64,000 bases of DNA from the NCBI RefSeq assembly GCF_006345805.1, contig NC_043012.1:18476001-18540000 (forward strand), given 5' to 3'. Below, one piece after another: positions 3,911-63,787 of the stretch. A program made the translations under genes and the position numbers. The notes beneath the pieces were generated by a model. The model was not told the DNA's origin and made no database searches. It saw nothing but the letters and a program-made list of their open reading frames with translations. The number at the start of each line of letters is the position of its first letter. The first letter of the stretch is position 1. The DNA comes from Octopus sinensis. Its lineage: Eukaryota.

Positions 3911-3990
<80 letters not shown>

Positions 3991-4119
3991 ATATCTTTCT
4001 TTCTTTCTTTCTATCTATGTGTGCGTATCTGTGTGCGTTTGCGTGCGTGTGTGTGTACTTGTGTGAGTGTGTATGTGCTTATATATGTATACATTGGGTA
4101 TATATGCTTATCATTATTT

Positions 4120-5345
4120 ATTTTCATTTCCAGATTTGTTGCCAATAGAAAAGGATCTAGTTTCTAACCTAGATCCAAGACTTCTCCATTTCAACAATAT
4201 CAACTAGTTATTTTGTTTTTATGTATATATGTACGTATATGTGCAGATTTGTATGTTTTGGTTTATGTATTCTCATGCATATGGTTGCATATCTAAACAT
4301 GCTCATGTATAAATAATAATTTTACAGATTTTTACATTCCCAGTGATAGACTGGATTTGTAGTCTTCGAATCAACTTTCTCCTTTGTGGTTTGAGAAGGC
4401 TAATTTCTCAAGATTCGTATTTAGATAGTGTGTTACATATCCCAGTGTCCCAATGATTACAGGCGTAAACCTAAACTTGTAATCTTGATAAAATAACAGC
4501 AAATTTGTCAATAGTTCAGCATAAGTATTTTGTTTATCTCTGATATTTTGCTTTATACTAACATCCGCTGGGTAGCTACTTTAAGAACTGTACACAGTTT
4601 CTCTTCTCTATCACAAATCGCTATGTCAGGTCCATTATTTTACATTTTATTGGGTTTTCACTGGGGCATTGCACCAGTATTCCTTTTTATTATGAATGGC
4701 TATGTCTTCTCCCATATTATGGGATCTTATTTCTTTATCCTCTGTGCTATCCTTCTGACGGAACTCGTTATACAGTGTCATAGCTAGTATATCGTTTCTC
4801 ATCGATAGATAATCCCCTGACATAATTTTCGGACAACTGCTTATAATATGGGTGATATCTCCGGTGTCATTTCCACAAAGTCTGCATCGGTTGCCTCATT
4901 TTGCCGATTTTCCCGCACCTCTGTCACTTCTGTGCATCAGGTATTTGTTTGATATTTCCTGTTCCTTGATTGCAAACACATACCCTCAAAGTGGGAGGTA
5001 GAAATCGGGTTGTTGAAGTCACTGTCATCTCACAGCTTTCTACTAACATATCCATACATGGTCTTCTGCTTATATGCCCTCATCAGATGGTACGTTGCGG
5101 TAAAATATTGCGAATTCGCTGGGCATGTGTTTAAGTTTATCAGAATTTATTTTCCAACTGCTATGATGTTATAAACTTCATGTACGCAAACTTAGTCAAG
5201 GGATGCATTTCGACACTTGGTGGATAATATTTGATGACGAAGGGATAGGATCCGACATTCAAAGGCAGTCTGGATTGATGTTAAGACTCTGTCGCCTTGC
5301 TTTTCTTTTAGGTAGTGGCTTTCTACGTCACTGTTGATGTATAAA
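4120..5345 (-). mobile_element. R4/Dong-like LINE 3' fragment with CCHC knuckle, REL endonuclease remnant and 3' UTR (copy 1)
   Basis: Minus strand reads RCRLCGNDTGDITHIISSCPK (4827-4890), then EYWCNAPVKT..GPDIAICDREEKLCTV and FTPVIIGTLGYVT; multiple stops and frameshifts. Confidence 0.85.
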
Positions 5346-5405: not shown

Positions 5406-5522
<117 letters not shown>

Positions 5523-5651
5523 ATATCTTTCTTTCTTTCTTTCTATCTATGTGTGCGTATCTGTGTGCGTTTGCGTGCGTGTGTGTGTACTTGTGTGAGT
5601 GTGTATGTGCTTATATATGTATACATTGGGTATATATGCTTATCATTATTT

Positions 5652-6877
5652 ATTTTCATTTCCAGATTTGTTGCCAATAGAAAAGGATCTAGTTTCTAAC
5701 CTAGATCCAAGACTTCTCCATTTCAACAATATCAACTAGTTATTTTGTTTTTATGTATATATGTACGTATATGTGCAGATTTGTATGTTTTGGTTTATGT
5801 ATTCTCATGCATATGGTTGCATATCTAAACATGCTCATGTATAAATAATAATTTTACAGATTTTTACATTCCCAGTGATAGACTGGATTTGTAGTCTTCG
5901 AATCAACTTTCTCCTTTGTGGTTTGAGAAGGCTAATTTCTCAAGATTCGTATTTAGATAGTGTGTTACATATCCCAGTGTCCCAATGATTACAGGCGTAA
6001 ACCTAAACTTGTAATCTTGATAAAATAACAGCAAATTTGTCAATAGTTCAGCATAAGTATTTTGTTTATCTCTGATATTTTGCTTTATACTAACATCCGC
6101 TGGGTAGCTACTTTAAGAACTGTACACAGTTTCTCTTCTCTATCACAAATCGCTATGTCAGGTCCATTATTTTACATTTTATTGGGTTTTCACTGGGGCA
6201 TTGCACCAGTATTCCTTTTTATTATGAATGGCTATGTCTTCTCCCATATTATGGGATCTTATTTCTTTATCCTCTGTGCTATCCTTCTGACGGAACTCGT
6301 TATACAGTGTCATAGCTAGTATATCGTTTCTCATCGATAGATAATCCCCTGACATAATTTTCGGACAACTGCTTATAATATGGGTGATATCTCCGGTGTC
6401 ATTTCCACAAAGTCTGCATCGGTTGCCTCATTTTGCCGATTTTCCCGCACCTCTGTCACTTCTGTGCATCAGGTATTTGTTTGATATTTCCTGTTCCTTG
6501 ATTGCAAACACATACCCTCAAAGTGGGAGGTAGAAATCGGGTTGTTGAAGTCACTGTCATCTCACAGCTTTCTACTAACATATCCATACATGGTCTTCTG
6601 CTTATATGCCCTCATCAGATGGTACGTTGCGGTAAAATATTGCGAATTCGTTGGGCATGTGTTTAAGTTTATCAGAATTTATTTTCCAACTGCTATGATG
6701 TTATAAACTTCATGTACGCAAACTTAGTCAAGGGATGCATTTCGACACTTGGTGGATAATATTTGATGACGAAGGGATAGGATCCGACATTCAAAGGCAG
6801 TCTGGATTGATGTTAAGACTCTGTCGCCTTGCTTTTCTTTTAGGTAGTGGCTTTCTACGTCACTGTTGATGTATAAA
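5652..6877 (-). mobile_element. R4/Dong-like LINE 3' fragment (copy 2, created by the tandem duplication)
   Basis: Near-identical to 4120-5345 at offset 1532. Confidence 0.85.
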
Positions 6878-17884: not shown

Positions 17885-18287
17885 ACCCTCTCTCTTTTAC
17901 TTATTTTAGCCATTTGACTGCGGCCATGCTGGAGCACCGCCTTTAGTCGGGCAATTCGGCCCCGGGACTTATTCTTTGTAAGCCCAGTACTTATTCTATC
18001 GGTCCCTTTTGCCGAACCGCTAAGTGACGGGGACGTAAACACACCAGCATCGGTTGTCAAGCGATGTTGGTGGGACAAACACAAACACACACACATACAC
18101 ACACACACACACATATATGTATATATACATATATACGACAGGCTTCTTTCAGTTTCCGTCTACCAAATCCACTCACAAGGCATTGGTCGGCCCGGGGTTA
18201 TAGCAGAAGATGCCATGCAGTGGGACTGAACCCGGAACAATGTGGTTGGTTAGCAAGCTACTTACCACGCAACCACTCCTTCGCCTG
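17885..18287 (-). mobile_element. tRNA-derived SINE, family B, near full length
   Basis: Reverse complement of the 42093-42510 copy, including the internal microsatellite. Confidence 0.9.
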
Positions 18288-21971: not shown

Positions 21972-22246
21972 AATATTAAAACTTATCGTCAAACTAACAT
22001 GGCAGACCAGAAAAATATGATGAATTCTGCCGTTGATTTGCCCCAAGAAGTCATCGCCTGTAACTAGGTATGTAATACACGAACGCGCTACCATTATAAC
22101 CTTCCTACAGGGGGAGGTCAGCCGTTTCTCCGTGCTGGTCTGGCATCTACAGATTAGTTTCAGGGTATTTGCCCCTTACCAATGTAGAGCAGCCGAAACT
22201 AGCAAGCGTCGCTACAGACCGTCTGTTCCAATGATTATTTACCTAA
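21972..22246 (+). mobile_element. Truncated copy of the adjacent MITE
   Basis: Colinear with ~22335-22603 (cacgaacgcgctaccattataac...ggaggtcagccgtttctcc...ctggtctggcatctacaga); lacks the right TIR. Confidence 0.8.
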
Positions 22247-22296
22247 ATTCAGTGGAAAAAATCCACTGGTTTTAAAAAATAGAAATATTAATACAC

Positions 22297-22733
22297 CTAA
22301 GTCTCGCTAAAGGAGACTACATCAGCGGTACTGGATATTAATAGTTATCACCAAACATGGGAGTCCAGAAAAATAGGACGAATGCTGCCGTTGATTTACT
22401 CCAAGAGGTTATCGCCTCTAGCTAGCTATGTAACACACGAACGCGCTACCATTATAACATTCCTACAGGCGGAGGTCAGCCGTTTCTCCTTGCTGGTCTG
22501 GCATCTACAGACTAGTTTCAGGTTATTTGCCCCTGATCAATGTAAATCAGCCGAACCAGGCAGCGATCACCACTTACCGTGTATTTGAAGGATTATTTAC
22601 CTAGGTAGAGGCGATGGCCTCTTGCAGCTAATCAACGGCAGCATTCGTCCTAATTTTCTGGACTGCCATGTTAGCTTGGCGATAACTATTAATATCCAGT
22701 ACCGCTGCCGCAGTCTCTTTTAGAGAGACTTGG
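22297..22733. mobile_element. MITE-like element with ~125-bp terminal inverted repeats
   Basis: 22299-22424 is the reverse complement of 22601-22731; no coding capacity. Confidence 0.85.
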
Positions 22734-22758
22734 AAATATATTTCTATTATATATACAA

Positions 22759-29914: not shown

Positions 29915-30345
29915 GCTAAGAGTGGCTCTGTGGTAAGTATCTTGCTTACCAACCACATGGTAAATCAGCCACATGGTTCCGGGTCCAGTCCCACTGCGCG
30001 GCACCTTGGGCAAGTGATTTCAACTATAGCCTCGGACCGACCAATGCGTTGTGAGTGGATTTGGTAGACGGAAACTGACAGAAGCCTGTCGTATATATGT
30101 ATGTACATATATGTATATATATACATATATGTATGTGTGCATGTTTGTGTGTCTGTGTTTGTCCCACCAACATTGCTTGACAACGGATGCTGGTGTGTTT
30201 ACGTCCCCGTAACTTAGCGGTTCGTCCAAACAGACCGATAGAATAAGTAATAGGCTTCCAAAGAATAAGTCTCGCGGTCGATTTTCTCGACTAACGGCGG
30301 TGCTCCAGCATGGCCACAGTCAAATGACTGAAACAATTAAATGGA
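29915..30345 (+). mobile_element. Family B SINE, near full length
   Basis: Head, caccttgggcaagtg core, internal microsatellite and tail all present. Confidence 0.9.
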
Positions 30346-31089
30346 AAGAGGCGAAATGTATTTTTATCTAAATCGTACAAGTTATTAGATATTTTCGGCA
30401 CACACAATCAAACAAAACTATAAATTTATGCGTATCCTGCCATCGTATATATAAATATGAAAATGTGTGTGCGTGCGTGTGTGTGTATGTGTGTGTGTGT
30501 GTGTGTATGCGCGCGCATGCATGTGTATATGTGTTACTTCCCCGCAAACTAGCAGTCCAGGAAAAGGATAATGGCAGTGGATTTGTTAAAATTATGACTT
30601 CATGAAATAACTGAAACATATAAAAGATAAAAGCTTAAGATACAAATATTTTTCTAAGATTTACTATAGAAAACCACCCAACATCTGATGCAAATAAAAT
30701 TGTATGTGTTATGATACCCAAATATTTTTCGTATCGATATAAACGTTGCAAGTAAATAATAACGAGCCATAAAGACGCCAAAAAGTGTCGGCTCGATACC
30801 CATACCAAAAAATACAGAAAAAAATCATAATTCTAATAAAAGCATATCGTGGAATTCTGCAGAGAGTCTAAATTTGACGCTGCATGTTTACTTATGACCA
30901 AATACATAAGTATATCTAGACACCTACGCTAATTGTTTGCATATACACATATTTATATATATATATATATATCGCTATGGGCTCCGTGTGGGCAGTCATC
31001 TAAAAGTTTTTGTTCATCTTGATGCTGACATAAGTTCCTTGTTTTTCCTGATGAGAAGGCGGCATAATGCACCCCTTATTCCTTCGAAA

Positions 31090-31310
31090 TTATATGTCGA
31101 AAATAAAGGAATTTTGTTAATTCGTCGTTCAACTGCATTCTTTCATTTATTTGTATTAAAAAAAAAACACACAAATTTCCACACGAAGGCACGTGATATC
31201 TGCCCTTGGCATGTAGCTTCAACCGTGTTTTTCTGACGTGAATTTGCTACCCAGGTATCGGTTAATCGAATTATCCATAATAAGATAATTCATTCAACTA
31301 CTCAATTACT
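31090..31310 (+). repeat. Dispersed repeat D (other copies at 45213-45412 and partially at ~51490-51560)
   Basis: atatgtcgaaaataaagga.ttttgttaattcgtcgttcaact...gtgaatttgctacccaggtatcggttaa shared; each main copy ends at a (TA)n tract. Confidence 0.85.
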
Positions 31311-37079: not shown

Positions 37080-38160
37080 CACCGATAATCTGACGTTGAT
37101 CGTCAGTACCTTCCTACAAGTAATGGGGGAAGATGAATGATTCGAGTAGAACTGTGCTACAAGACTTCCATCATAGCAATGAACAAGTACTTATCTATTA
37201 CAGGGGACTGAATGCTGCGGCTTGTGTGCTAACACGAAATCAGCAAAAGATCAAACTCCATTGTGAAGGAAGCTTCCAAATCCACAAACGAACGCGGCAT
37301 TAACCCTGAATTGGAACAAGAAGCGGAAACAACTTCCACCAAACAATCAAACGGATCAAACATATAGCAAAAAAGTATGGGCAGAAACAAACCGAGAAGA
37401 GGTGGAGCTAGACACCTCTGCATGGACATTATATACTTCGAAACCGAAATGCTCATGTAGAGCAAGCAACAACCCATTGGTGGCTGAGAAGGTCTGAATG
37501 CAGAGAATGAAGGTTTCTAATTTGCGACACAAGATCAAAGCTTGCTTACCAAAAATTACCAGAGTAAATTCTTTAAAACGGTTCACACTCTAAATGCAGA
37601 TTCTGCAATAAATTTTTTGAAACTATAGAGCATCTCGTCTCGGGATGTCCTGTACTGAGACCAAGCGAACAGAAATAATTGCTACGATAATGTAGGACAG
37701 GATTTATAAAAAATGTAAATACTACAAAATCAGAACTCCTGCTTACTGGACATAATCCTGAGTCAATCGTTGAATGTAAAAATGTCACTATCCTCGGGGA
37801 TTTTCCAGTCAACACCGACTGAATGGTGCAGGCTAATCTACAAGAGAGTCATTAAAGAGAAGGAAGAAAATGCTTCTGCACTAATAGATGTAAGTACTCC
37901 CACCGCCAATAATATATCTGTAAAGAAAGGTGACGAATTAATTAAATATAAGGACGTGGAAATTGAAATACAAAATGTGTGGCATCTTAAAGCGGGAACT
38001 AATCCCATTATTGTAGGTTATAACTGGGCAGTTATGATAAGAAAAGGATGTCAGAAACATGTAGATAATATCCGGCGAGAACCATGTCTCAGAGAAATCC
38101 AAAAGATTCTGCTGATAAATACTGCCCACGTCCTATGAAAAACCCTTTTAATTTAAATAT
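37080..38160 (+). mobile_element. R4/Dong-like LINE 3' fragment with CCHC knuckle and REL endonuclease
   Basis: KCRFCNKFFETIEHLVSGCP at ~37592-37650; ALIDVSTPTANNISVKKGDELIKYKDVEIEIQNVWHLKAGTNPIIVG at ~37880-38020. Confidence 0.9.
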
Positions 38161-42092: not shown

Positions 42093-42510
42093 GGCGCAGC
42101 AGTGGCTGTGTGGTAAGTAGCTTGCTAACAAACCACATGGTTCCGGGTTCAGTCCCACTGCGTGGCATCTTGGGCAAGTGTCTTCTGCTATAGCCCCGGG
42201 CCGACCAATGCCTTGTGAGTGGATTTGGTAGACGGAAACTGAAAGAAGCCTGTGGTATATATGTATATATATATATATGTGTGTGTGTGTGTTTGTGTGT
42301 CTGTGTTTGTCCCCCCTAGCATTGCTTGACAACCGATGCTGGTGTGTTTACGTCCCCGTCACTTAGCGGTTCGGCAAAAGAGACCGATAGAATAAGTACT
42401 GGGCTTACAAAGAATAAGTCTCGTGGTCGATTTGCTCGATTAAAGGCGGTGCTCCAGCATGGCCGCAGTCAAATGACTGAAACAGGTAAAAGAGTAAAGA
42501 GTAAAGAGTA
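42093..42510 (+). mobile_element. tRNA-derived SINE, family B, best full-length copy
   Basis: Box A-like TGGCTGTGTGG, box B-like GGTTCAGTCCC, CORE-like cttgggcaagtg, internal (TA)/(TG) tract and gtaaaga tail repeats. Confidence 0.92.
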
Positions 42511-46392: not shown

Positions 46393-46720
46393 AATACTGA
46401 CATCTCATTTTAACAGATATATTTATCAAAATTACATAAAAATATTTTGAAATACTCAAGAGTAAATTTATTCATTAAACTGTCATCGGCTTCAAACACG
46501 GTCTCCAGACGACTTCGGAATCTCCTGCAACTCTTCAGGACGGTCACCTTGTTGGTGATTGCTGTCTTAACCCTTGCCTTCAATTCATCTTTGGTGTTAC
46601 AAGGAATGTTTTTGGTCTGTCGCAAAACTGCGCTCCACACATAATAACCAAGAGAGTTGCAATCTAGGGAGTTAATTGCCGAATATGACAGTGGTGACGT
46701 GGTCGCAGACATCGTCGGAC
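46393..46720 (-). mobile_element. Tc1/mariner-type transposase C-terminal remnant
   Basis: NSLDCNSLGYYVWSAVLRQTKNIPCNTKDELKARVKTAITNKVTVLKSCRRFRSRLETVFEAD, resembling NSPDCNPLDYYVW...ACRRFRSRLEAVVEA. Confidence 0.85.
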
Positions 46721-48447
46721 AGCTATGACTGGGTTCTCATAACTATGTGTCATGAAGATTCCTGTTGTCAGACACAGGGTTTACCAGCAGCTATCCACGT
46801 GACTCAGGGCAGGACTGAGTGTGTGAAGATCAACTGATGCCTAACACCACCATCATTAGTGAACGCACCAAAAACAACGAGACAAAAATGGAAAACAGGA
46901 CAGGAAAACACAAAGAACGACCCTTTATCAGTTGTTGGCTGTCTACTTCTCATTTCGAGCATTCAACGACACTATGATTCTTCAAAGACATTTTCTTCCT
47001 GTGTCTACATAACCTACAGTCACCCGATATATTACGTGTCAGTGGATATATAACATAGTTACAGATTACAGTCGTAAGCAGCGTAGAACAATATGGTACA
47101 AGTGAGGTGTAGTAGGTTGTGACATCTTAATAATTTCAGTAACAATATATCTTTTAGGTACTATGATAAAATACTGTTATGAAAATAAACGCCTGGATCT
47201 GATTTACAAATTTATACGTTATAATTTACATACAATCTATTAATCTTTCCAGCTGTTCAAACAACTAAACGAGTGCGCGTTGAAAAGGTACTCTCTGTTG
47301 TTTAATATCCCATGTTATATTTTTGGTTTCTTATAGATTTGGAGATATTATCGTAGACATCCATAATGATGTGTTATTCGAAAGTAGTCTCTCTGTTTTT
47401 AGACAAGCATTAAAATAAAAACAACTTTTGCATTCCGTTACTTGATTTGTATATATCCAAATTCTACGATGCTATATATCTATAGATCTGGATTCTATTT
47501 TTCAACTAAAAGCGTATAAACAGATAAAGCATGGACACTAATGAGGGTGAAGGCAAGGCAACAACACAGTTTATGCATGGGTTACAGATACATAGAAATG
47601 AGAAGAATTAAGCGAAAACTTAAGATTACACTTTATGGCAAGTTGTTTAGAAATAGCTAATTAATGTGCGTCAATATTGTGATTAATTTTAATGTTTGTT
47701 TAAAAGCAAAGAAACAATTTTCGTGTGAGTCATGTTTATGGATGTCTGCGACTGTATTTCTAGCTTCATAAGAAACTGGAAATATAACGTGGGAAATTAA
47801 ACAGCAGAGAGAAACTTTTCAACACGCATTACTTTAAGCTCCACGAAAAAAAAAAAAAATATCTAATTTTTATGAGAAATTGGAATATAATTATGTCACT
47901 GCTTTAGCAGCTTGGAAATTAAAATGTAATCAAATAATGAGTTGTGATTCTCGCGAACAAAATGGTAATTAATAGAGAATAGTTTAAACGTAAGTGAAAT
48001 TGTCATGTTGGGAATTAAAACCTAATAGGGAATAATTGTTCGAAAACTTTTTAGCTCACAAAGAACTGTACATGCTAATGGAAAATGGAATTTTTATTTA
48101 TCTTACATTCATTTCATTTGTGTCATTCACATTTGCATTCCTTCTACACGAAACGAATAGAATACACGTAGGCATATTTGAAACAACATGTTCTACTGCC
48201 CTCCCCCCCACCCAAAAAAGGAAAGAAAAAGAACAATGCAAATAAGGAAGAAATGCATTTTCCAATATATGCTAGGTAGCTTGTCAGTAACATATCTGAG
48301 TGTGAAATGGCATGTCAGCTATCATAGGATGTTGTGAAATAATACGTAAACTAAAGTGGGCAGCTTAAAAGTAAACGTATGAAATCTCTGGAAAAAAATA
48401 CAGTAACATATATATGTACATGCATAATAGGACTCTAAGGAAAGCAT

Positions 48448-56214: not shown

Positions 56215-57050
56215 AATTTCATGTGGCATTTTGCTGAGTGACTCTCTGTTACTTCTCTGATGTCTAACCATAATACCTGTCTGGAAATTGCTTGATGATG
56301 TACAATATGGCTATACAATGTTTGATAATGATATAAATAATCTCTTTTACATGTATGATGTAAAGCCCTTTGCAAAAAATGACCAACAATTACAGGACTT
56401 ACTGGCAATTGTTAAACAATTCAGTGATGACATCAGAAGGCAATTTGGTCTCGGTAAATGTGCAGAAATCACATTTTTGAAGAAAAAAATGTCAGAAACA
56501 TCCAACGTTGAACTTGACCGGTAGAATGGTTAAACATAAAGGAGTTACAAGCAGCGGAGAGCTACAAATACCTAGGATCGGAAGAGAATAGTATCTTAAG
56601 GTTATGGAAATATTAAAGACAGAGCTCAATGCAAGTAATAGGATCGAAGCAATCAATACTTTAGCCATACCGGCCATTACTTAGTTTCAATACCATTAAC
56701 CGGTCAATTACTGAAATATGTAGTATTGACAGAAAAAATACGAAAATTGATGACATTGTATAGAATGCACCACACTAAGACAGATATAGAACGATTTTTC
56801 CTGCCAAGAGGGCGGTCGTGGACTTTTACAACTGGAATAACACTGAAGATTGCCACAATTGGCGTAAACACCTACATGGAAACATCCGATGCCTGGACGT
56901 TAAAATTTGTCTTAAAGCATGAAAACAAGAAGGCATTGTACTCACTAACAAACCAGGAAAAAACAAAATCTAAGTAAATTCCAAATACAACATATCCCAG
57001 ACTTAGACGTACTGGAAACAAGCATAGAACAAGGTAAGTATATGTAAACC
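56215..57050 (+). mobile_element. R4/Dong-like LINE reverse transcriptase fragment
   Basis: INNLFYMYDVKPFAKNDQQLQDLLAIVKQFSDDIRRQFGLGKCA (decayed YMDD) and EKIRKLMTLYRMHHTKTDIERFFLPRG. Confidence 0.9.
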
Positions 57051-57387: not shown

Positions 57388-57555
57388 CGCAGGAGCGGTG
57401 GTAAGTACCTTGCAACCACATGGTTCCGGGTTCAATCCCACTGCGTGGCACCTTGGACGGGTGTTTTCTACTATAGCCTCGAGCCGACCAAAGCTTTGTG
57501 AGTGGATATGGTAGACGGACACTGAAAGCAGACCGTCTGATATATATATATATAT

Positions 57556-57594
<39 letters not shown>

Positions 57595-61774: not shown

Positions 61775-62172
61775 TCGTCTATTCTTTTTTGATTCAGTTA
61801 TTTGATTTAGGCCATGCTCGAGCACCGCATTCAGTCGAACAAATCGCCCCCCAGCTCTTATTTTTTGTAAGCCCAGTACTTATTATATCGATTTACTATT
61901 GCCGAACCGCTAGATTACGGGGACAAGCACAGGCACACAACTCCCCACATACACACACACACACATACACACACGCACACACACACACACTTATATATAT
62001 AGACGACAAGCTTCTTTCAGTTTCCGCCTACCAAATTCACTCACAAGGATTTCGTGGAACGGAAATTATAGTAAAAGGCACTTGCCCAAGGTGCCACGCA
62101 GTAGGACCGAACCCGGAAGAATGAGGTTGGTAATCAAGCTACTTGGTAATCAAGTTACACACCCTTGCGCCT
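61775..62172 (-). mobile_element. Family B SINE, diverged
   Basis: ggccatgctcgagcaccgc tail and cttgcccaaggtgccacgcag core. Confidence 0.8.
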
Positions 62173-62182
62173 ATATATATAT

Positions 62183-62226
<44 letters not shown>

Positions 62227-62260
62227 TACATACATATATGCATGTATTTATATGTATATG

Positions 62261-62308
<48 letters not shown>

Positions 62309-62525
62309 TATAACAATGATAAATATCAAAGTGAGTTATATACAGTAGCGGTAACACATCGTGACGTATTTTTGCCATTTCAATATGGCTAACCCCTAAG
62401 GGTGGATGCTACTGTAGTTTTTAGCCCCAGGAGGACACACTCCTCCAGCTGGCCATAGACACACTATCTGTGTCCTGTCAGTATTTGCAAAGGGAAGTCA
62501 TCCTTCCCGTCTTCAACTTATGATA

Positions 62526-62570
62526 CACACGGACTCGAGTTTCGAGGTATTGACCTCTCGTCAGCGTGTG
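62526..62570 (-). ncRNA. Type I hammerhead ribozyme, copy 1
   Basis: 5'-CACACG CUGACGA GAGG UCAAUA CCUC GAAAC UCGA GUC/CGUGUG-3': full core, 6-bp stem I, 4-bp stem II with G10.1-C11.1, palindromic stem III, GUC site cleaving between 62532 and 62531. Confidence 0.92.
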
Positions 62571-62878
62571 ACAATCATAGTTGTCGCCGAGAATTAGATT
62601 TCCTTCACAAATACTTATACTTTTTCCAGCGTCCACTGTCGCTGATATTGAAAAAGTGAAATCAAACAATGATAAATATCAAAGTGAGTTATATACAGTA
62701 GCGGTAACACATCGTGACGTATTTTTGCCATTTCAATATGGCTAACCCCTAAGGGTGGATGCTACTGTAGTTTTTAGCCCCAGGAGGACACACTCCTCCA
62801 GCTAGCCATAGACACACTATCTGTGTCCTGTCAGTATTTGCAAAGGGAAGTCATCCTTCCCGTCTTCAACTTATGATA

Positions 62879-62923
62879 CACACGGACTCGAGTTTCGAGG
62901 TATTGACCTCTCGTCAGCGTGTG
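62879..62923 (-). ncRNA. Type I hammerhead ribozyme, copy 2
   Basis: Identical 45-nt sequence 353 bp away; cleavage predicted between 62885 and 62884. Confidence 0.92.
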
Positions 62924-63787
62924 ACAATCATAGTTGTCGTCGAGAATTAGATTTCCTTCACAAATACTTATACTTTTTCCAGAACTTTTGTATAAATATC
63001 TAAATGAATATGTACGTGTGTGTGTGTAATTATATATATATATATATATAGTTATATGTATATATACAAATATATATATTTACTTGCGTATATGTATATA
63101 CATGTATATATGTAGATACACATATACAATTATCTATGTGCGTGAGCGTACGTCTTTGCTGTGTGTATGTATATTTGTAAACATACATACCCATTTATAC
63201 GTATGTGTGTGTGTGTGTCTTAAGTGTATATCTATATATGGACAAGTTTTCCAGCCAGCACGATTCCTGTTTGCGTGATAAACAAATAACGGCTAACAAA
63301 AATATCAAGATATGACGTAAGAATATAAGAATGATTAATGATTTCACCTCGATGAAATCAATATGAACAGTTTTATCTCCCTTTCCTTTGGAGCCATTTC
63401 AATATACGTTATTGATATTTTTTTACACATTTACTTTTACATATTTTGCTTTTTGCACTTTTTCTTTGTTCAATTAATCTTGGTTATTAATTTTTGTCTC
63501 CATTTCACATTCTATTGATTGATACTTTGTTCAATGTCACTATATACATTTTTATATTTTATTGACAATTTGTATTAGTTTCTTCATATTTTTATGTATA
63601 TTCAGGAAATTTATTGCTTTTGCCCAGAGTGATATCAAACTTTAACATTCCTTGTGTAATATGTCTTATTATTTTTTTGTTTGTGTCTTATTTTGATGTT
63701 TAATTCTAGATAGATCACTACTGCTAGCCGTAATATTTCCGAATCTTAAACTTTCTGAAGAACCTGTCTTGATATGACCACCGTATA

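What the first reader, a model, noticed from the sequence alone, without database searches (positions are those of the whole stretch)
62312..62982. Tandem 353-bp repeat with one intact hammerhead ribozyme per unit: a candidate cephalopod retrozyme / circular RNA system
Seen: two near-identical units (2 substitutions), each with a textbook type I hammerhead on the minus strand (CUGACGA, GAAA, GUC, 6-bp stem I, 4-bp stem II). Stem III is the palindrome ACUCGAGU, too short to fold well as a monomer but able to pair between two copies. Known: non-LTR retrozymes in metazoans are short tandem non-coding repeats with type I hammerheads that yield linear and circular monomers, and they are thought to use Penelope-like machinery; weak palindromic stem III ribozymes act as double hammerheads (newt satellite 2, ASBVd). 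Inference: a minus-strand transcript through both sites would release an exact 353-nt monomer (62884 to 62532). The low divergence suggests recent mobility. I cannot tell whether this family is already catalogued.
Basis: partly seen in the sequence, partly recalled or inferred. Interest (0 to 1): 0.92.

Follow-up and report, generated by a model that had tools for sequence, protein, structure and literature searches.

The report
Tandem hammerhead-ribozyme repeat (non-LTR retrozyme)
A 353-bp non-coding repeat, present as 1.9 tandem copies that each carry an intact self-cleaving hammerhead ribozyme, fits by sequence a known class of animal mobile elements (non-LTR retrozymes), so it is real but ordinary for its kind.

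Summary
Window 62312-62982 holds 1.9 tandem copies of a 353-bp unit that differ by 2 substitutions. Each copy has an identical, complete type I hammerhead on the minus strand (Rfam RF00163, 32.2 bits, just under the 34-bit cut-off; a full structural descriptor gave 0 hits in 200 shuffles of the window).

Cutting at both GUC sites would release exactly 353 nt (62884 to 62532). That RNA folds far better than shuffles (z -7.0 linear, -6.3 circular). Alone, the ribozyme's active fold is disfavoured. The predicted lowest-energy fold of a transcript spanning both copies is the classic double hammerhead, with the palindrome ACUCGAGU forming an 8-bp shared helix III.

The unit is non-coding, has 42.5% GC, and sits between (TA)n tracts. 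In RNA sense the array is a 5'-truncated copy followed by a full one. All sequence-level features that define metazoan non-LTR retrozymes are met.

Not testable here: other genomic copies, transcription, circular RNA, mobilisation by Penelope-like elements, and the source organism (the cephalopod assignment is unverified). The class is already described in molluscs, and 235 type I hammerheads were already annotated in the giant squid genome. Verdict: new member of a known kind, of modest interest.

The parts
62312..62982 (-). Whole tandem array, 671 bp or 1.9 units. The RNA sense strand is the minus strand.
   Evidence: TRF period 353, 99% matches; direct-repeat family D16; self-BLAST.
62312..62664 (-). 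Full 353-nt unit, the 3' unit in RNA sense. Its 3' end (...UUAUCAUUGUU) abuts the degenerate end of the (TA)n tract.
62665..62982 (-). 5'-truncated unit of 318 nt, the upstream unit in RNA sense. It lacks the first 35 nt of the unit.
   Evidence: Alignment. The truncation point falls inside a 13-bp hairpin of the full unit.
62526..62570 (-). Hammerhead ribozyme 1 (type I). Cleavage is after C62532.
   Evidence: Rfam RF00163, 32.2 bits, full length; descriptor hit.
62879..62923 (-). Hammerhead ribozyme 2 (type I), identical to ribozyme 1. Cleavage is after C62885.
62532..62884 (-). Predicted 353-nt monomer released by cutting at both sites. This is the candidate circular RNA.
   Evidence: Coordinates. 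Linear MFE is -120.1 kcal/mol, z -7.0. Circular MFE is -115.0 kcal/mol, z -6.3, with 63% of bases paired.
62533..62540 (-). Helix III palindrome ACUCGAGU of ribozyme 1. It is predicted to pair with its twin at 62886-62893 in the double hammerhead.
   Evidence: The self-duplex of the 12-nt GAAACUCGAGUC segment holding the palindrome (8 bp) has -12.1 kcal/mol, whereas a hairpin of the palindrome alone has 0. The dimer cofold and the 503-nt transcript MFE both show the 8-bp shared helix.
62886..62893 (-). Helix III palindrome ACUCGAGU of ribozyme 2.
62619..62657 (-). Hairpin ACUUUUUC-CAGCG...CGCUG-GAAAAAGU (8 + 5 bp). It spans the point where the upstream copy is truncated, which shows that the 35-nt segment 62630-62664 belongs to the unit and is not junction filler.
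   Evidence: Helix list of the circular fold, also seen.
62172..62311 (.). (TA)n microsatellite next to the 3' end (RNA sense) of the array. This is the presumed insertion target.
   Evidence: TRF; sequence; bracketing statistic.
62983..63030 (.). 48-bp spacer between the array and the next (TA)n tract. Positions 62991-63015 weakly resemble the unit segment 62318-62343 (20/25). It may be a diverged 'tail' or it may be chance.
   Evidence: Local alignment score 23, reached by 5 of 500 shuffles.
63031..63126 (.). Degenerate (TA)n tract on the other side of the array.
   Evidence: TRF.

Best explanation
The locus is a dimeric copy of a non-autonomous, non-coding retroelement of the metazoan non-LTR retrozyme class, inserted at a (TA)n microsatellite.

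Shown by the sequence and by computation:
- The array has 1.9 tandem units of 353 bp.
- Each unit carries an intact canonical type I hammerhead on the minus strand.
- The unit has no coding capacity and moderate GC content.
- Its RNA is very strongly self-paired.
- In RNA sense the array is a 5'-truncated unit followed by a full unit.

Predicted thermodynamically: a single ribozyme prefers an inactive fold, in which CUCGA/UCGAG sequesters GAAA and helix III. A minus-strand transcript that spans both copies instead folds into a double hammerhead, with an 8-bp shared helix III and the helix I strands exchanged between the copies. That fold places both GUC|C sites in active cores and would release an exact 353-nt monomer.

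Inferred from what is published for the class:
- The monomer, with 5'-OH and 2',3'-cyclic phosphate ends held together by the closing helix CGUGUG/CACACG, is circularised by an RtcB-type tRNA ligase.
- In the circle, the absence of a second copy keeps the ribozyme off.
- The circular or multimeric RNA is reverse-transcribed for more than one turn by the RT/GIY-YIG machinery of an autonomous Penelope-like element, primed at a nick in (TA)n. This would produce head-to-tail, 5'-truncated arrays like this one.
For: Repeat and ribozymes: and (0 descriptor hits in 200 shuffles).

Core positions read directly from the sequence: C3-A9 = CUGACGA, a G10.1-C11.1 pair, G12A13A14, an A15.1-U16.1 pair, C17, and a C1.1-G2.1 pair. 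Helix I is 6 bp, then an internal loop (UGU/U), then a 5-bp extension AUGAU/AUCAU.

Folding:
- Monomer: -120.1 kcal/mol, z -7.0.
- Circle: -115.0 kcal/mol, z -6.3, 63% paired.
- Isolated ribozyme: active fold -12.1 against MFE -18.0 kcal/mol.
- Two-copy cofold: -40.7 kcal/mol, and the 503-nt dimeric transcript MFE is -174.0 kcal/mol. Both are the double hammerhead.

Composition and coding: GC is 42.5% against 33.4% for the window. The longest ORF in the unit is 63 aa and has no homologue among 5.8 billion proteins.

Context:
- The 35-nt segment is integral and the upstream copy is 5'-truncated.
- (TA)n tracts within 50 bp of both ends occur for about 0.3% of random TA-free 671-bp segments of this window.

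Literature:
- Class definition and mussel 350-390-bp repeats expressed as circular RNA, with RtcB circularisation: PMC7229834.
- Canonical metazoan type I hammerhead (helix I 6 bp, helix II 4 bp, helix III 1-2 bp with a palindromic loop) working as a dimer in tandem repeats: PMC4209133.
- Relationship of retrozymes to Penelope-like pLTRs: bioRxiv 10.64898/2026.07.22.740005.
- (TA)n insertion bias of Penelope-like elements: PMC8557442.
Against: - Only one locus is available. There is no other copy in the 64-kb window and none could be reached in any collection, so membership of a dispersed mobile family is not shown.
- The Rfam score is 1.8 bits below the curated cut-off.
- There is no evidence of transcription or of a promoter.
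- No RT or GIY-YIG ORF was seen in the window. Ten of the longest informative stop-free segments gave no Pfam hit.
- No target-site duplication can be read inside the microsatellite.
- Nearest-neighbour folding ignores the loop-loop tertiary contacts that can activate a single hammerhead, so dependence on the dimer is only a prediction. The authors of PMC7229834 report efficient monomeric cleavage for most invertebrate retrozyme ribozymes.
- (TA)n targeting is documented for Naiad elements, which lack canonical hammerheads, so the identity of the mobilising element is open.
Confidence: 0.8

Rival explanations
1. The array is a remnant of an autonomous Penelope-like element. It would be a tandem pair of its pseudo-LTRs, which carry hammerheads, left after loss of the internal RT/GIY-YIG ORF or lying next to an ORF beyond the window.
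For: Hammerheads sit in the pLTRs of Penelope-like elements, which form partial tandems and prefer microsatellites. Retrozymes and pLTRs are phylogenetically intermingled in Xenopus. In RNA sense, only about 1 kb of upstream sequence is visible before the window ends.
Against: The array is bounded closely on both sides by (TA)n. No long or RT-like ORF lies in the flanks. None of the ten fragments scanned against Pfam lies beside the array, and none gave a hit. Metazoan Penelope-like hammerheads are described as minimal variants with a long helix II (7-8 bp), a short helix I and no defined loop 1. This one has the canonical retrozyme-type architecture.
Confidence: 0.08
2. The tandem arose locally at the DNA level, by replication slippage or unequal crossing-over, from a solo hammerhead-bearing insertion. 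This particular locus would then be a silent relic that makes no circular RNA.
For: A tandem of only 1.9 units with 0.6% divergence can be produced by a single local duplication. No promoter or transcript evidence is available. Many retrozyme families consist largely of dispersed monomers and short arrays.
Against: The layout, a 5'-truncated unit followed by a full unit that ends at the (TA)n tract, is what multi-turn reverse transcription predicts. Both ribozymes are intact and identical. This rival concerns only how the array formed and whether this copy is active. It does not change what the element is.
Confidence: 0.1
3. The second unit is an assembly artefact, and there is a single 353-bp copy in the real genome.
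For: Short tandem repeats embedded in microsatellites are hard to assemble. Reads cannot be inspected here.
Against: The two units differ at two positions and the junction is a clean head-to-tail continuation. Such differences are not what a duplicated-consensus error usually leaves.
Confidence: 0.03
4. The hammerhead motif is a chance occurrence in an ordinary satellite, or it is a host cis-acting ribozyme (for mRNA processing) unrelated to mobile elements.
For: The Rfam score is below the gathering threshold.
Against: The full descriptor gave 0 hits in 200 shuffles and the whole-window E-value is 4.2e-4. All 15 core positions and all three helices are intact in both copies. The one-ribozyme-per-unit tandem layout and the highly structured unit (z -7.0) match the retrozyme pattern, not the single-copy intronic hammerheads of amniotes.
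Confidence: 0.02

Closest known systems
Non-LTR retrozymes of the mussel Mytilus galloprovincialis (Cervera & de la Peña 2020, PMC7229834)
   Same: Both are short non-coding tandem repeats of about 350-390 bp with one type I hammerhead per unit, low GC content and a highly self-paired RNA. If the cephalopod assignment holds, both are also from molluscs.
   Different: No sequence comparison with the mussel repeats could be made here. Mussel copies number about 5000 and are shown to give abundant circular RNA. Here there is one locus and no expression data. The mussel ribozymes are said to lack most loop 1/loop 2 contact nucleotides. Here helix I has the 6-bp stem plus internal loop geometry typical of the canonical form.
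Amphibian satellite 2 / axolotl retrozymes (HHR_Amex1/2, 330-350-bp repeats; PMC7229834)
   Same: The unit size is nearly identical (353 nt was even the size of the axolotl construct). Both have a type I hammerhead with a weak, palindromic helix III and are expected to depend on a dimeric (double) hammerhead.
   Different: The axolotl has about 126,000 motifs in long arrays, and dimeric activity there is shown experimentally. Here dimer dependence is only predicted by folding. Helix III here is of the '2 bp + tetraloop' kind that the authors call invertebrate-like.
Hammerheads in the pseudo-LTRs of Penelope-like elements (Cervera & de la Peña 2014, PMC4209133)
   Same: Both are type I, occur in tandem arrangement, have a palindromic helix III and follow the dimeric-activity logic. 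These elements are the likely source and mobiliser of retrozymes, and they show a microsatellite insertion bias.
   Different: The metazoan Penelope-like motifs are minimal variants (helix II 7-8 bp, helix I 4-5 bp, an extra unpaired base, often no helix III) and flank an RT/GIY-YIG ORF. Here the ribozyme is canonical and there is no ORF.
Rfam Hammerhead_1 (RF00163) hits annotated in the giant squid genome (235 loci; PMC6962438)
   Same: Both involve type I hammerheads in a cephalopod genome, if the window is cephalopod.
   Different: Those hits were only counted, at the gathering threshold, and were called cis-regulatory elements. They were not analysed for repeat context. The present ribozyme scores 32.2 bits, below the 34-bit threshold, and would be missed by that pipeline.
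Plant LTR retrozymes (PMC4918200)
   Same: Both are non-autonomous retroelements whose hammerheads excise a monomer that is circularised by a tRNA ligase.
   Different: The plant elements carry type III hammerheads in true LTRs, have a PBS and PPT, 4-bp target-site duplications, 600-1000-nt circles and GC above 55%, and depend on Gypsy elements. None of these applies here.

Membership tests
Metazoan non-LTR retrozyme (PMC7229834, Fig. 1C; bioRxiv 10.64898/2026.07.22.740005) | Type I hammerhead with an intact catalytic core in every unit of the repeat | tested here: met
   There are two identical full-length RF00163 matches (32.2 bits, E 4.2e-4 window-wide). All core nucleotides and helices I-III are intact. 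The score is 1.8 bits under Rfam's gathering score.
Metazoan non-LTR retrozyme | Short head-to-tail tandem repeat (units of about 170-400 bp, from dimers to large multimers) | tested here: met
   Period 353, 1.9 copies, 99% identity.
Metazoan non-LTR retrozyme | Low GC content (below 45-50%) | tested here: met
   42.5% GC.
Metazoan non-LTR retrozyme | Non-coding, with no LTR, PBS or PPT | tested here: met
   The longest ORF is 63 aa with no homologue. No terminal repeats other than the units themselves are present.
Metazoan non-LTR retrozyme | Highly self-paired monomer RNA | tested here: met
   MFE -120.1 kcal/mol, z -7.0. Circular fold -115.0 kcal/mol, z -6.3, 63% paired.
Metazoan non-LTR retrozyme | Multiple dispersed copies in the genome (a repeat family that has transposed) | not testable with these tools
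   No second copy is in the window. The source genome is not in any searchable collection.
Metazoan non-LTR retrozyme | Transcription, self-cleavage and accumulation of circular monomer RNA | not testable with these tools
   Only thermodynamic prediction of the double hammerhead in a dimeric transcript is available.
Metazoan non-LTR retrozyme | Co-occurrence with autonomous Penelope-like elements in the same genome | not testable with these tools
   None was found in the window. The literature reports recently active Penelope families in Octopus vulgaris (PMC13282606), but the organism of the window is unverified.
Metazoan non-LTR retrozyme | Target-site duplication longer than 4 bp, when present | tested here: inconclusive
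   Both flanks are (TA)n-like, so no unique duplication can be read. The same problem is described for Penelope-like elements in microsatellites.
Autonomous Penelope-like element (pLTR with hammerhead) | RT plus GIY-YIG endonuclease ORF between or next to the hammerhead-bearing repeats | tested here: not met
   No long ORF flanks the array and (TA)n closes it on both sides. Ten ORF fragments from elsewhere in the window gave no Pfam hit. Only about 1 kb is visible on one side.
Rfam Hammerhead_1 (RF00163) | Bit score at or above the curated gathering score (34) | tested here: not met
   The score is 32.2 bits. The alignment is full length without mispairs, so the shortfall reflects sequence differences in helix II and loop 2 and not a defect in the motif.
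Plant-type LTR retrozyme | Type III hammerhead in LTRs, with PBS/PPT and 4-bp target-site duplication | tested here: not met
   The open helix is helix I (type I), there are no LTRs, and GC is 42.5%.

The most novel reading that the evidence does not exclude
This is a currently active retrozyme family in a cephalopod, a lineage where such elements have never been characterised. It would make an abundant 353-nt circular RNA whose ribozyme is switched on only in multimeric transcripts (an obligate double hammerhead). It would spread by (TA)n-targeted, multi-turn reverse transcription using the recently active Penelope elements of octopus genomes. Because it scores below Rfam's threshold, the whole family would have been invisible to standard genome annotation.
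Probability: 0.3. Interest if true: 0.5.

Novelty: new member of a known kind. Interest (0 to 1): 0.3.

Why it matters
If the family proves to be multi-copy and expressed, it would add cephalopods to the animals that make ribozyme-derived circular RNAs. It would also give a clean natural example of a hammerhead whose activity is gated by copy number: active as a double hammerhead in the precursor and silent in the circle. In addition, it points to an annotation blind spot. The ribozyme is complete but scores 1.8 bits under the Rfam cut-off, so gathering-threshold pipelines, such as the one used for the giant squid genome, would undercount such elements. None of this changes current understanding of retrozymes. 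It extends a known pattern to one more lineage.

Tried and rejected
**Searches for related copies (all negative):**
- Exact look-up of the 63-aa ORF that spans the ribozyme, and of two neighbouring ORFs, found nothing on record.
- A homology search with the 63-aa ORF found no candidate.
- Pattern scans for the ribozyme and for a GC-rich hairpin of the unit found 0 matches in JGI metagenome contigs, IMG/VR viral contigs and GTDB genome contigs.
- Ribozyme sequence strings occur in no paper of the library.

**Attempts to identify the organism (all failed):**
- TE-like protein fragments gave no hit, or only two unnamed metagenome proteins.
- There are no tRNA genes and no Rfam family at gathering score.
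- SINE sequence strings appear in no paper.
- The cephalopod label therefore stays unverified.

**Search for a Penelope-like ORF in the window:** there are no ORFs of 120 aa or more apart from low-complexity ones. Ten of the longest informative stop-free segments gave no Pfam hit at E <= 0.01.

**Is the 358-bp tandem repeat at 21996-22740 the same family?** It shows no similarity to the 353-bp unit and has no canonical hammerhead, so the idea was rejected.

**Is the 35-nt segment between the units junction filler or a 'tail'?** This was rejected because the segment forms half of a 13-bp hairpin with the adjacent unit sequence.

**miRNA-family 'hits' around the array** (mir-297, mir-3149 and others) are (TA)n/(CA)n low-complexity artefacts far below their gathering scores.
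Full report
**1. The observation.** The sequence at 62312-62982 is a head-to-tail repeat of period 353, with 1.9 copies, 99% matches and no indels. An alignment of the two units shows two substitutions in the 318 shared positions, and the second unit lacks 35 nt at one end.

The 33-nt string CUGACGAGAGGUCAAUACCUCGAAACUCGAGUC occurs exactly twice, on the minus strand at 62564-62532 and 62917-62885, and never in shuffled sequence. Rfam's Hammerhead_1 model aligns to both sites over its whole length without a mispair, at 32.2 bits. That is 1.8 bits under the curated gathering score, so the default scan reports nothing. The E-value is 5.9e-6 for the local search and 4.2e-4 for the whole window on both strands.

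A structural descriptor I wrote (helix I, CUGANGA, helix II, GAAA, short helix III, UH) finds these sites and gave no hit in 200 dinucleotide-preserving shuffles of the whole window. Helix I is CACACG/CGUGUG. Helix II is GAGG/CCUC, extendable to 5 bp with a CAAU tetraloop. Helix III is the palindrome ACUCGAGU, and cleavage is at GUC|C. Cutting after C62532 and C62885 gives a monomer running 62884 to 62532, which is 353 nt.

**2.

- *Helix I geometry.* Helix I continues past a small internal loop (UGU opposite U) into a further 5 bp (AUGAU/AUCAU). This gives the '6 bp then loop 1' geometry of canonical metazoan type I hammerheads (sequence; description of the canonical form in PMC4209133).
- *Composition and coding.* The unit has 42.5% GC in a window of 33.4%. 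Its longest ORF is 63 aa and has no relative among 5.8 billion clustered proteins.
- *Folding.* The 353-nt monomer folds to -120.1 kcal/mol, against -86.7 ± 4.8 for shuffles (z -7.0). As a circle it folds to -115.0 kcal/mol (z -6.3) with 63% of bases paired, closed by the helix I strands.
- *The 35-nt segment.* The 35 nt present only between the units (62630-62664) are not filler. They form half of a 13-bp hairpin (ACUUUUUC-CAGCG / CGCUG-GAAAAAGU, 62657-62619) with the start of the next stretch. The true unit is therefore 353 nt. In RNA sense (minus strand) the array is a 5'-truncated unit (318 nt) followed by a full unit whose 3' end abuts the degenerate end of the (TA)n tract.
- *Flanks.* (TA)n tracts lie on both sides (62172-62311 and 63031-63126). 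For random TA-free segments of the same length in this window, a tract within 50 bp of both ends occurs about 0.3% of the time.

**3. How the ribozyme would work.** For an isolated 61-nt ribozyme, the active three-helix fold is worth -12.1 kcal/mol, whereas the MFE is -18.0 kcal/mol. The MFE is an alternative in which helices II and III are not formed. In the full-length monomer the alternative pairs CUCGA with UCGAG and buries GAAA and helix III.

Two copies cofold to -40.7 kcal/mol, which is lower than twice -18.0. The structure is the double hammerhead: both helix II hairpins are intact, ACUCGAGU pairs with its twin as an 8-bp helix III, and the helix I strands are exchanged between copies. 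The MFE of the 503-nt minus-strand transcript covering both genomic ribozymes (-174.0 kcal/mol) contains exactly this arrangement around the folded monomer. The self-duplex of the 12-nt GAAACUCGAGUC segment holding the palindrome (8 bp) is worth -12.1 kcal/mol, and a hairpin of the palindrome alone is worth nothing.

The calculation ignores the loop 1/loop 2 tertiary contacts. The authors of PMC7229834 report that most invertebrate retrozyme hammerheads cleave efficiently as single motifs, so dimer dependence remains to be tested.

**4. What it is.** PMC7229834 defines metazoan non-LTR retrozymes as follows:

- type I hammerheads within short tandem repeats of about 170-400 bp, from dimers to large multimers;
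- low GC content;
- no LTR, PBS or PPT, and no coding capacity;
- highly self-paired RNAs expressed as circles and circularised by an RtcB-type tRNA ligase.

A 2026 preprint calls a copy 'active' when every unit carries the type I hammerhead, and it relates the elements to the pseudo-LTRs of Penelope-like elements. PMC4209133 describes this exact ribozyme layout (helix I 6 bp, helix II 4 bp, helix III 1-2 bp with a palindromic loop) as the canonical metazoan form that acts as a dimer in tandem repeats.

All the sequence-level criteria are met here. The criteria that need the rest of the genome or RNA data could not be tested. These are dispersed copies, circular RNA, and co-resident Penelope-like elements. 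I therefore file the locus as a member by sequence criteria, with the life cycle inferred.

The array form fits multi-turn reverse transcription of a circular or multimeric template primed at a nick in (TA)n. It is 1.9 near-identical units, 5'-truncated upstream, with the 3' end on (TA)n and the ends not at the ribozyme cut site. Penelope-like elements show a microsatellite and (TA)n bias that also hides target-site duplications (PMC8557442). This step is inference, and (TA)n bias is documented for Naiads, which lack canonical hammerheads.

**5. Rivals.**

- *Remnant pLTR pair of an autonomous Penelope-like element.* This is unlikely. The array is closed by (TA)n on both sides, no RT-like ORF is nearby, and metazoan Penelope-like hammerheads are minimal variants unlike this one.
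- *Local DNA-level duplication of a solo copy, or a silent locus.* This cannot be excluded. It concerns the history and activity of this copy, not its identity.
- *Assembly artefact.* The two substitutions between the units argue against it, but it needs long reads.
- *Chance.* This is excluded.

**6. 'Recent mobility'.** Two units of one array would be near-identical after one insertion or one duplication. Their 0.6% divergence therefore dates the array, not family activity. Suppose the window were from an octopus, and suppose the distance-to-time scale used for O. vulgaris applied (JC 0.09 at about 25 My, PMC13282606). Two changes in 318 nt would then put the array at roughly 1 My. With only two events, the uncertainty spans more than an order of magnitude. 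This is a conditional estimate of mine, not a tool result.

**7. Organism and novelty.** I could not verify that the window is cephalopod. Within the searchable literature, no paper characterises retrozymes in cephalopods. However, the giant squid genome paper already lists 235 Rfam Hammerhead_1 matches (PMC6962438). Retrozyme-like repeats are stated to occur in many invertebrate phyla including molluscs, and recently active Penelope families are reported in O. vulgaris.

The finding is thus a well-formed new member of a known kind. One practical point is that the ribozyme falls just below Rfam's cut-off, so routine annotation would miss this family.

**8. Other things seen.**

- A second complete hammerhead-like motif, unrelated in sequence, lies at 31036-31112 (+) inside a roughly 330-bp single-copy block that is also bracketed by (TA)n. 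Rfam does not detect it even at E <= 10, and its fold is unremarkable.
- A 358-bp tandem repeat with an inverted partial copy at 21996-22740 is again bracketed by (TA)n. It has a layout like that of a Penelope-like element but no canonical hammerhead.
- Together these suggest that (TA)n tracts in this genome are a preferred landing site for short non-coding elements.

Noticed in passing
window 30974-31303 (motif 31036-31112, + strand): This is a second complete hammerhead-like motif, unrelated in sequence to the 353-bp unit. Helix I is CCUUGUUUUUC/GAAAAUAAAGG (9 of 11 pairs), CUGAUGA is at 31048-31054, helix II is GAAGG/CCUUC with a 21-nt loop, GAAA is at 31086-31089, helix III is short, and GUC| ends at 31098. 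It sits in a roughly 330-bp single-copy block bracketed by (TA)n on both sides. My descriptor found it (0 hits in 200 shuffles), but Rfam did not, even at E <= 10. The fold z-score is only about -0.9. It may be a solo copy of another retrozyme-like family.
   Followed up: partly
window 21996-22740: Two tandem copies of a roughly 358-bp unit (85% identical) are followed by an inverted partial copy, and the whole is bracketed by (TA)n. This tandem-plus-inverted layout is described for Penelope-like insertions. There is no canonical hammerhead (one copy has CUGAUGU..., another has ...GGAAA), no similarity to the 353-bp unit, and no Pfam hit in its ORFs.
   Followed up: partly
window 62983-63030: This is the 48-bp spacer between the array and the next (TA)n tract. 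It starts with AAC, as the unit does, and 62991-63015 matches unit positions 62318-62343 at 20/25 (5 of 500 shuffles score as well). It could be a diverged 'tail' of the kind reported at the ends of Penelope-like insertions, or it could be chance.
   Followed up: partly
window 61947-62160, 18079-18209, 29932-30155, 42115-42306, 57413-57586: There are at least five copies (75-95% identical, both orientations) of a SINE-like repeat of about 130-240 bp. One lies immediately beside the (TA)n tract that borders the array. ARAGORN finds no tRNA-like head.
   Followed up: no
window 3922-4221 and 5454-5753 (also 4650-4895 / 6182-6427): A 1532-bp tandem duplication, 100% identical over the 300-nt pair reported (3922-4221 / 5454-5753), includes (TATC)n microsatellite sequence. 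Two identical 82-aa cysteine/histidine-rich ORF fragments (4650-4895 and 6182-6427), spaced by the same 1532 bp, lie beside it; they look TE-derived and have no Pfam hit.
   Followed up: no
window 46413-46736 (-), 37719-38135 (+), 56261-56974 (+): These are decayed protein-coding fragments that look transposon-derived. The first has two unnamed relatives at 49-55% identity from ENA; the one looked up lies on a metagenome scaffold. None gave a Pfam hit.
   Followed up: partly
whole window: Dozens of below-threshold Rfam 'miRNA' matches (mir-297, mir-3149, mir-1277, mir-466) all fall on (TA)n or (CA)n microsatellites and are low-complexity artefacts. (TA)>=6 tracts cover about 5% of the window.
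   Followed up: yes
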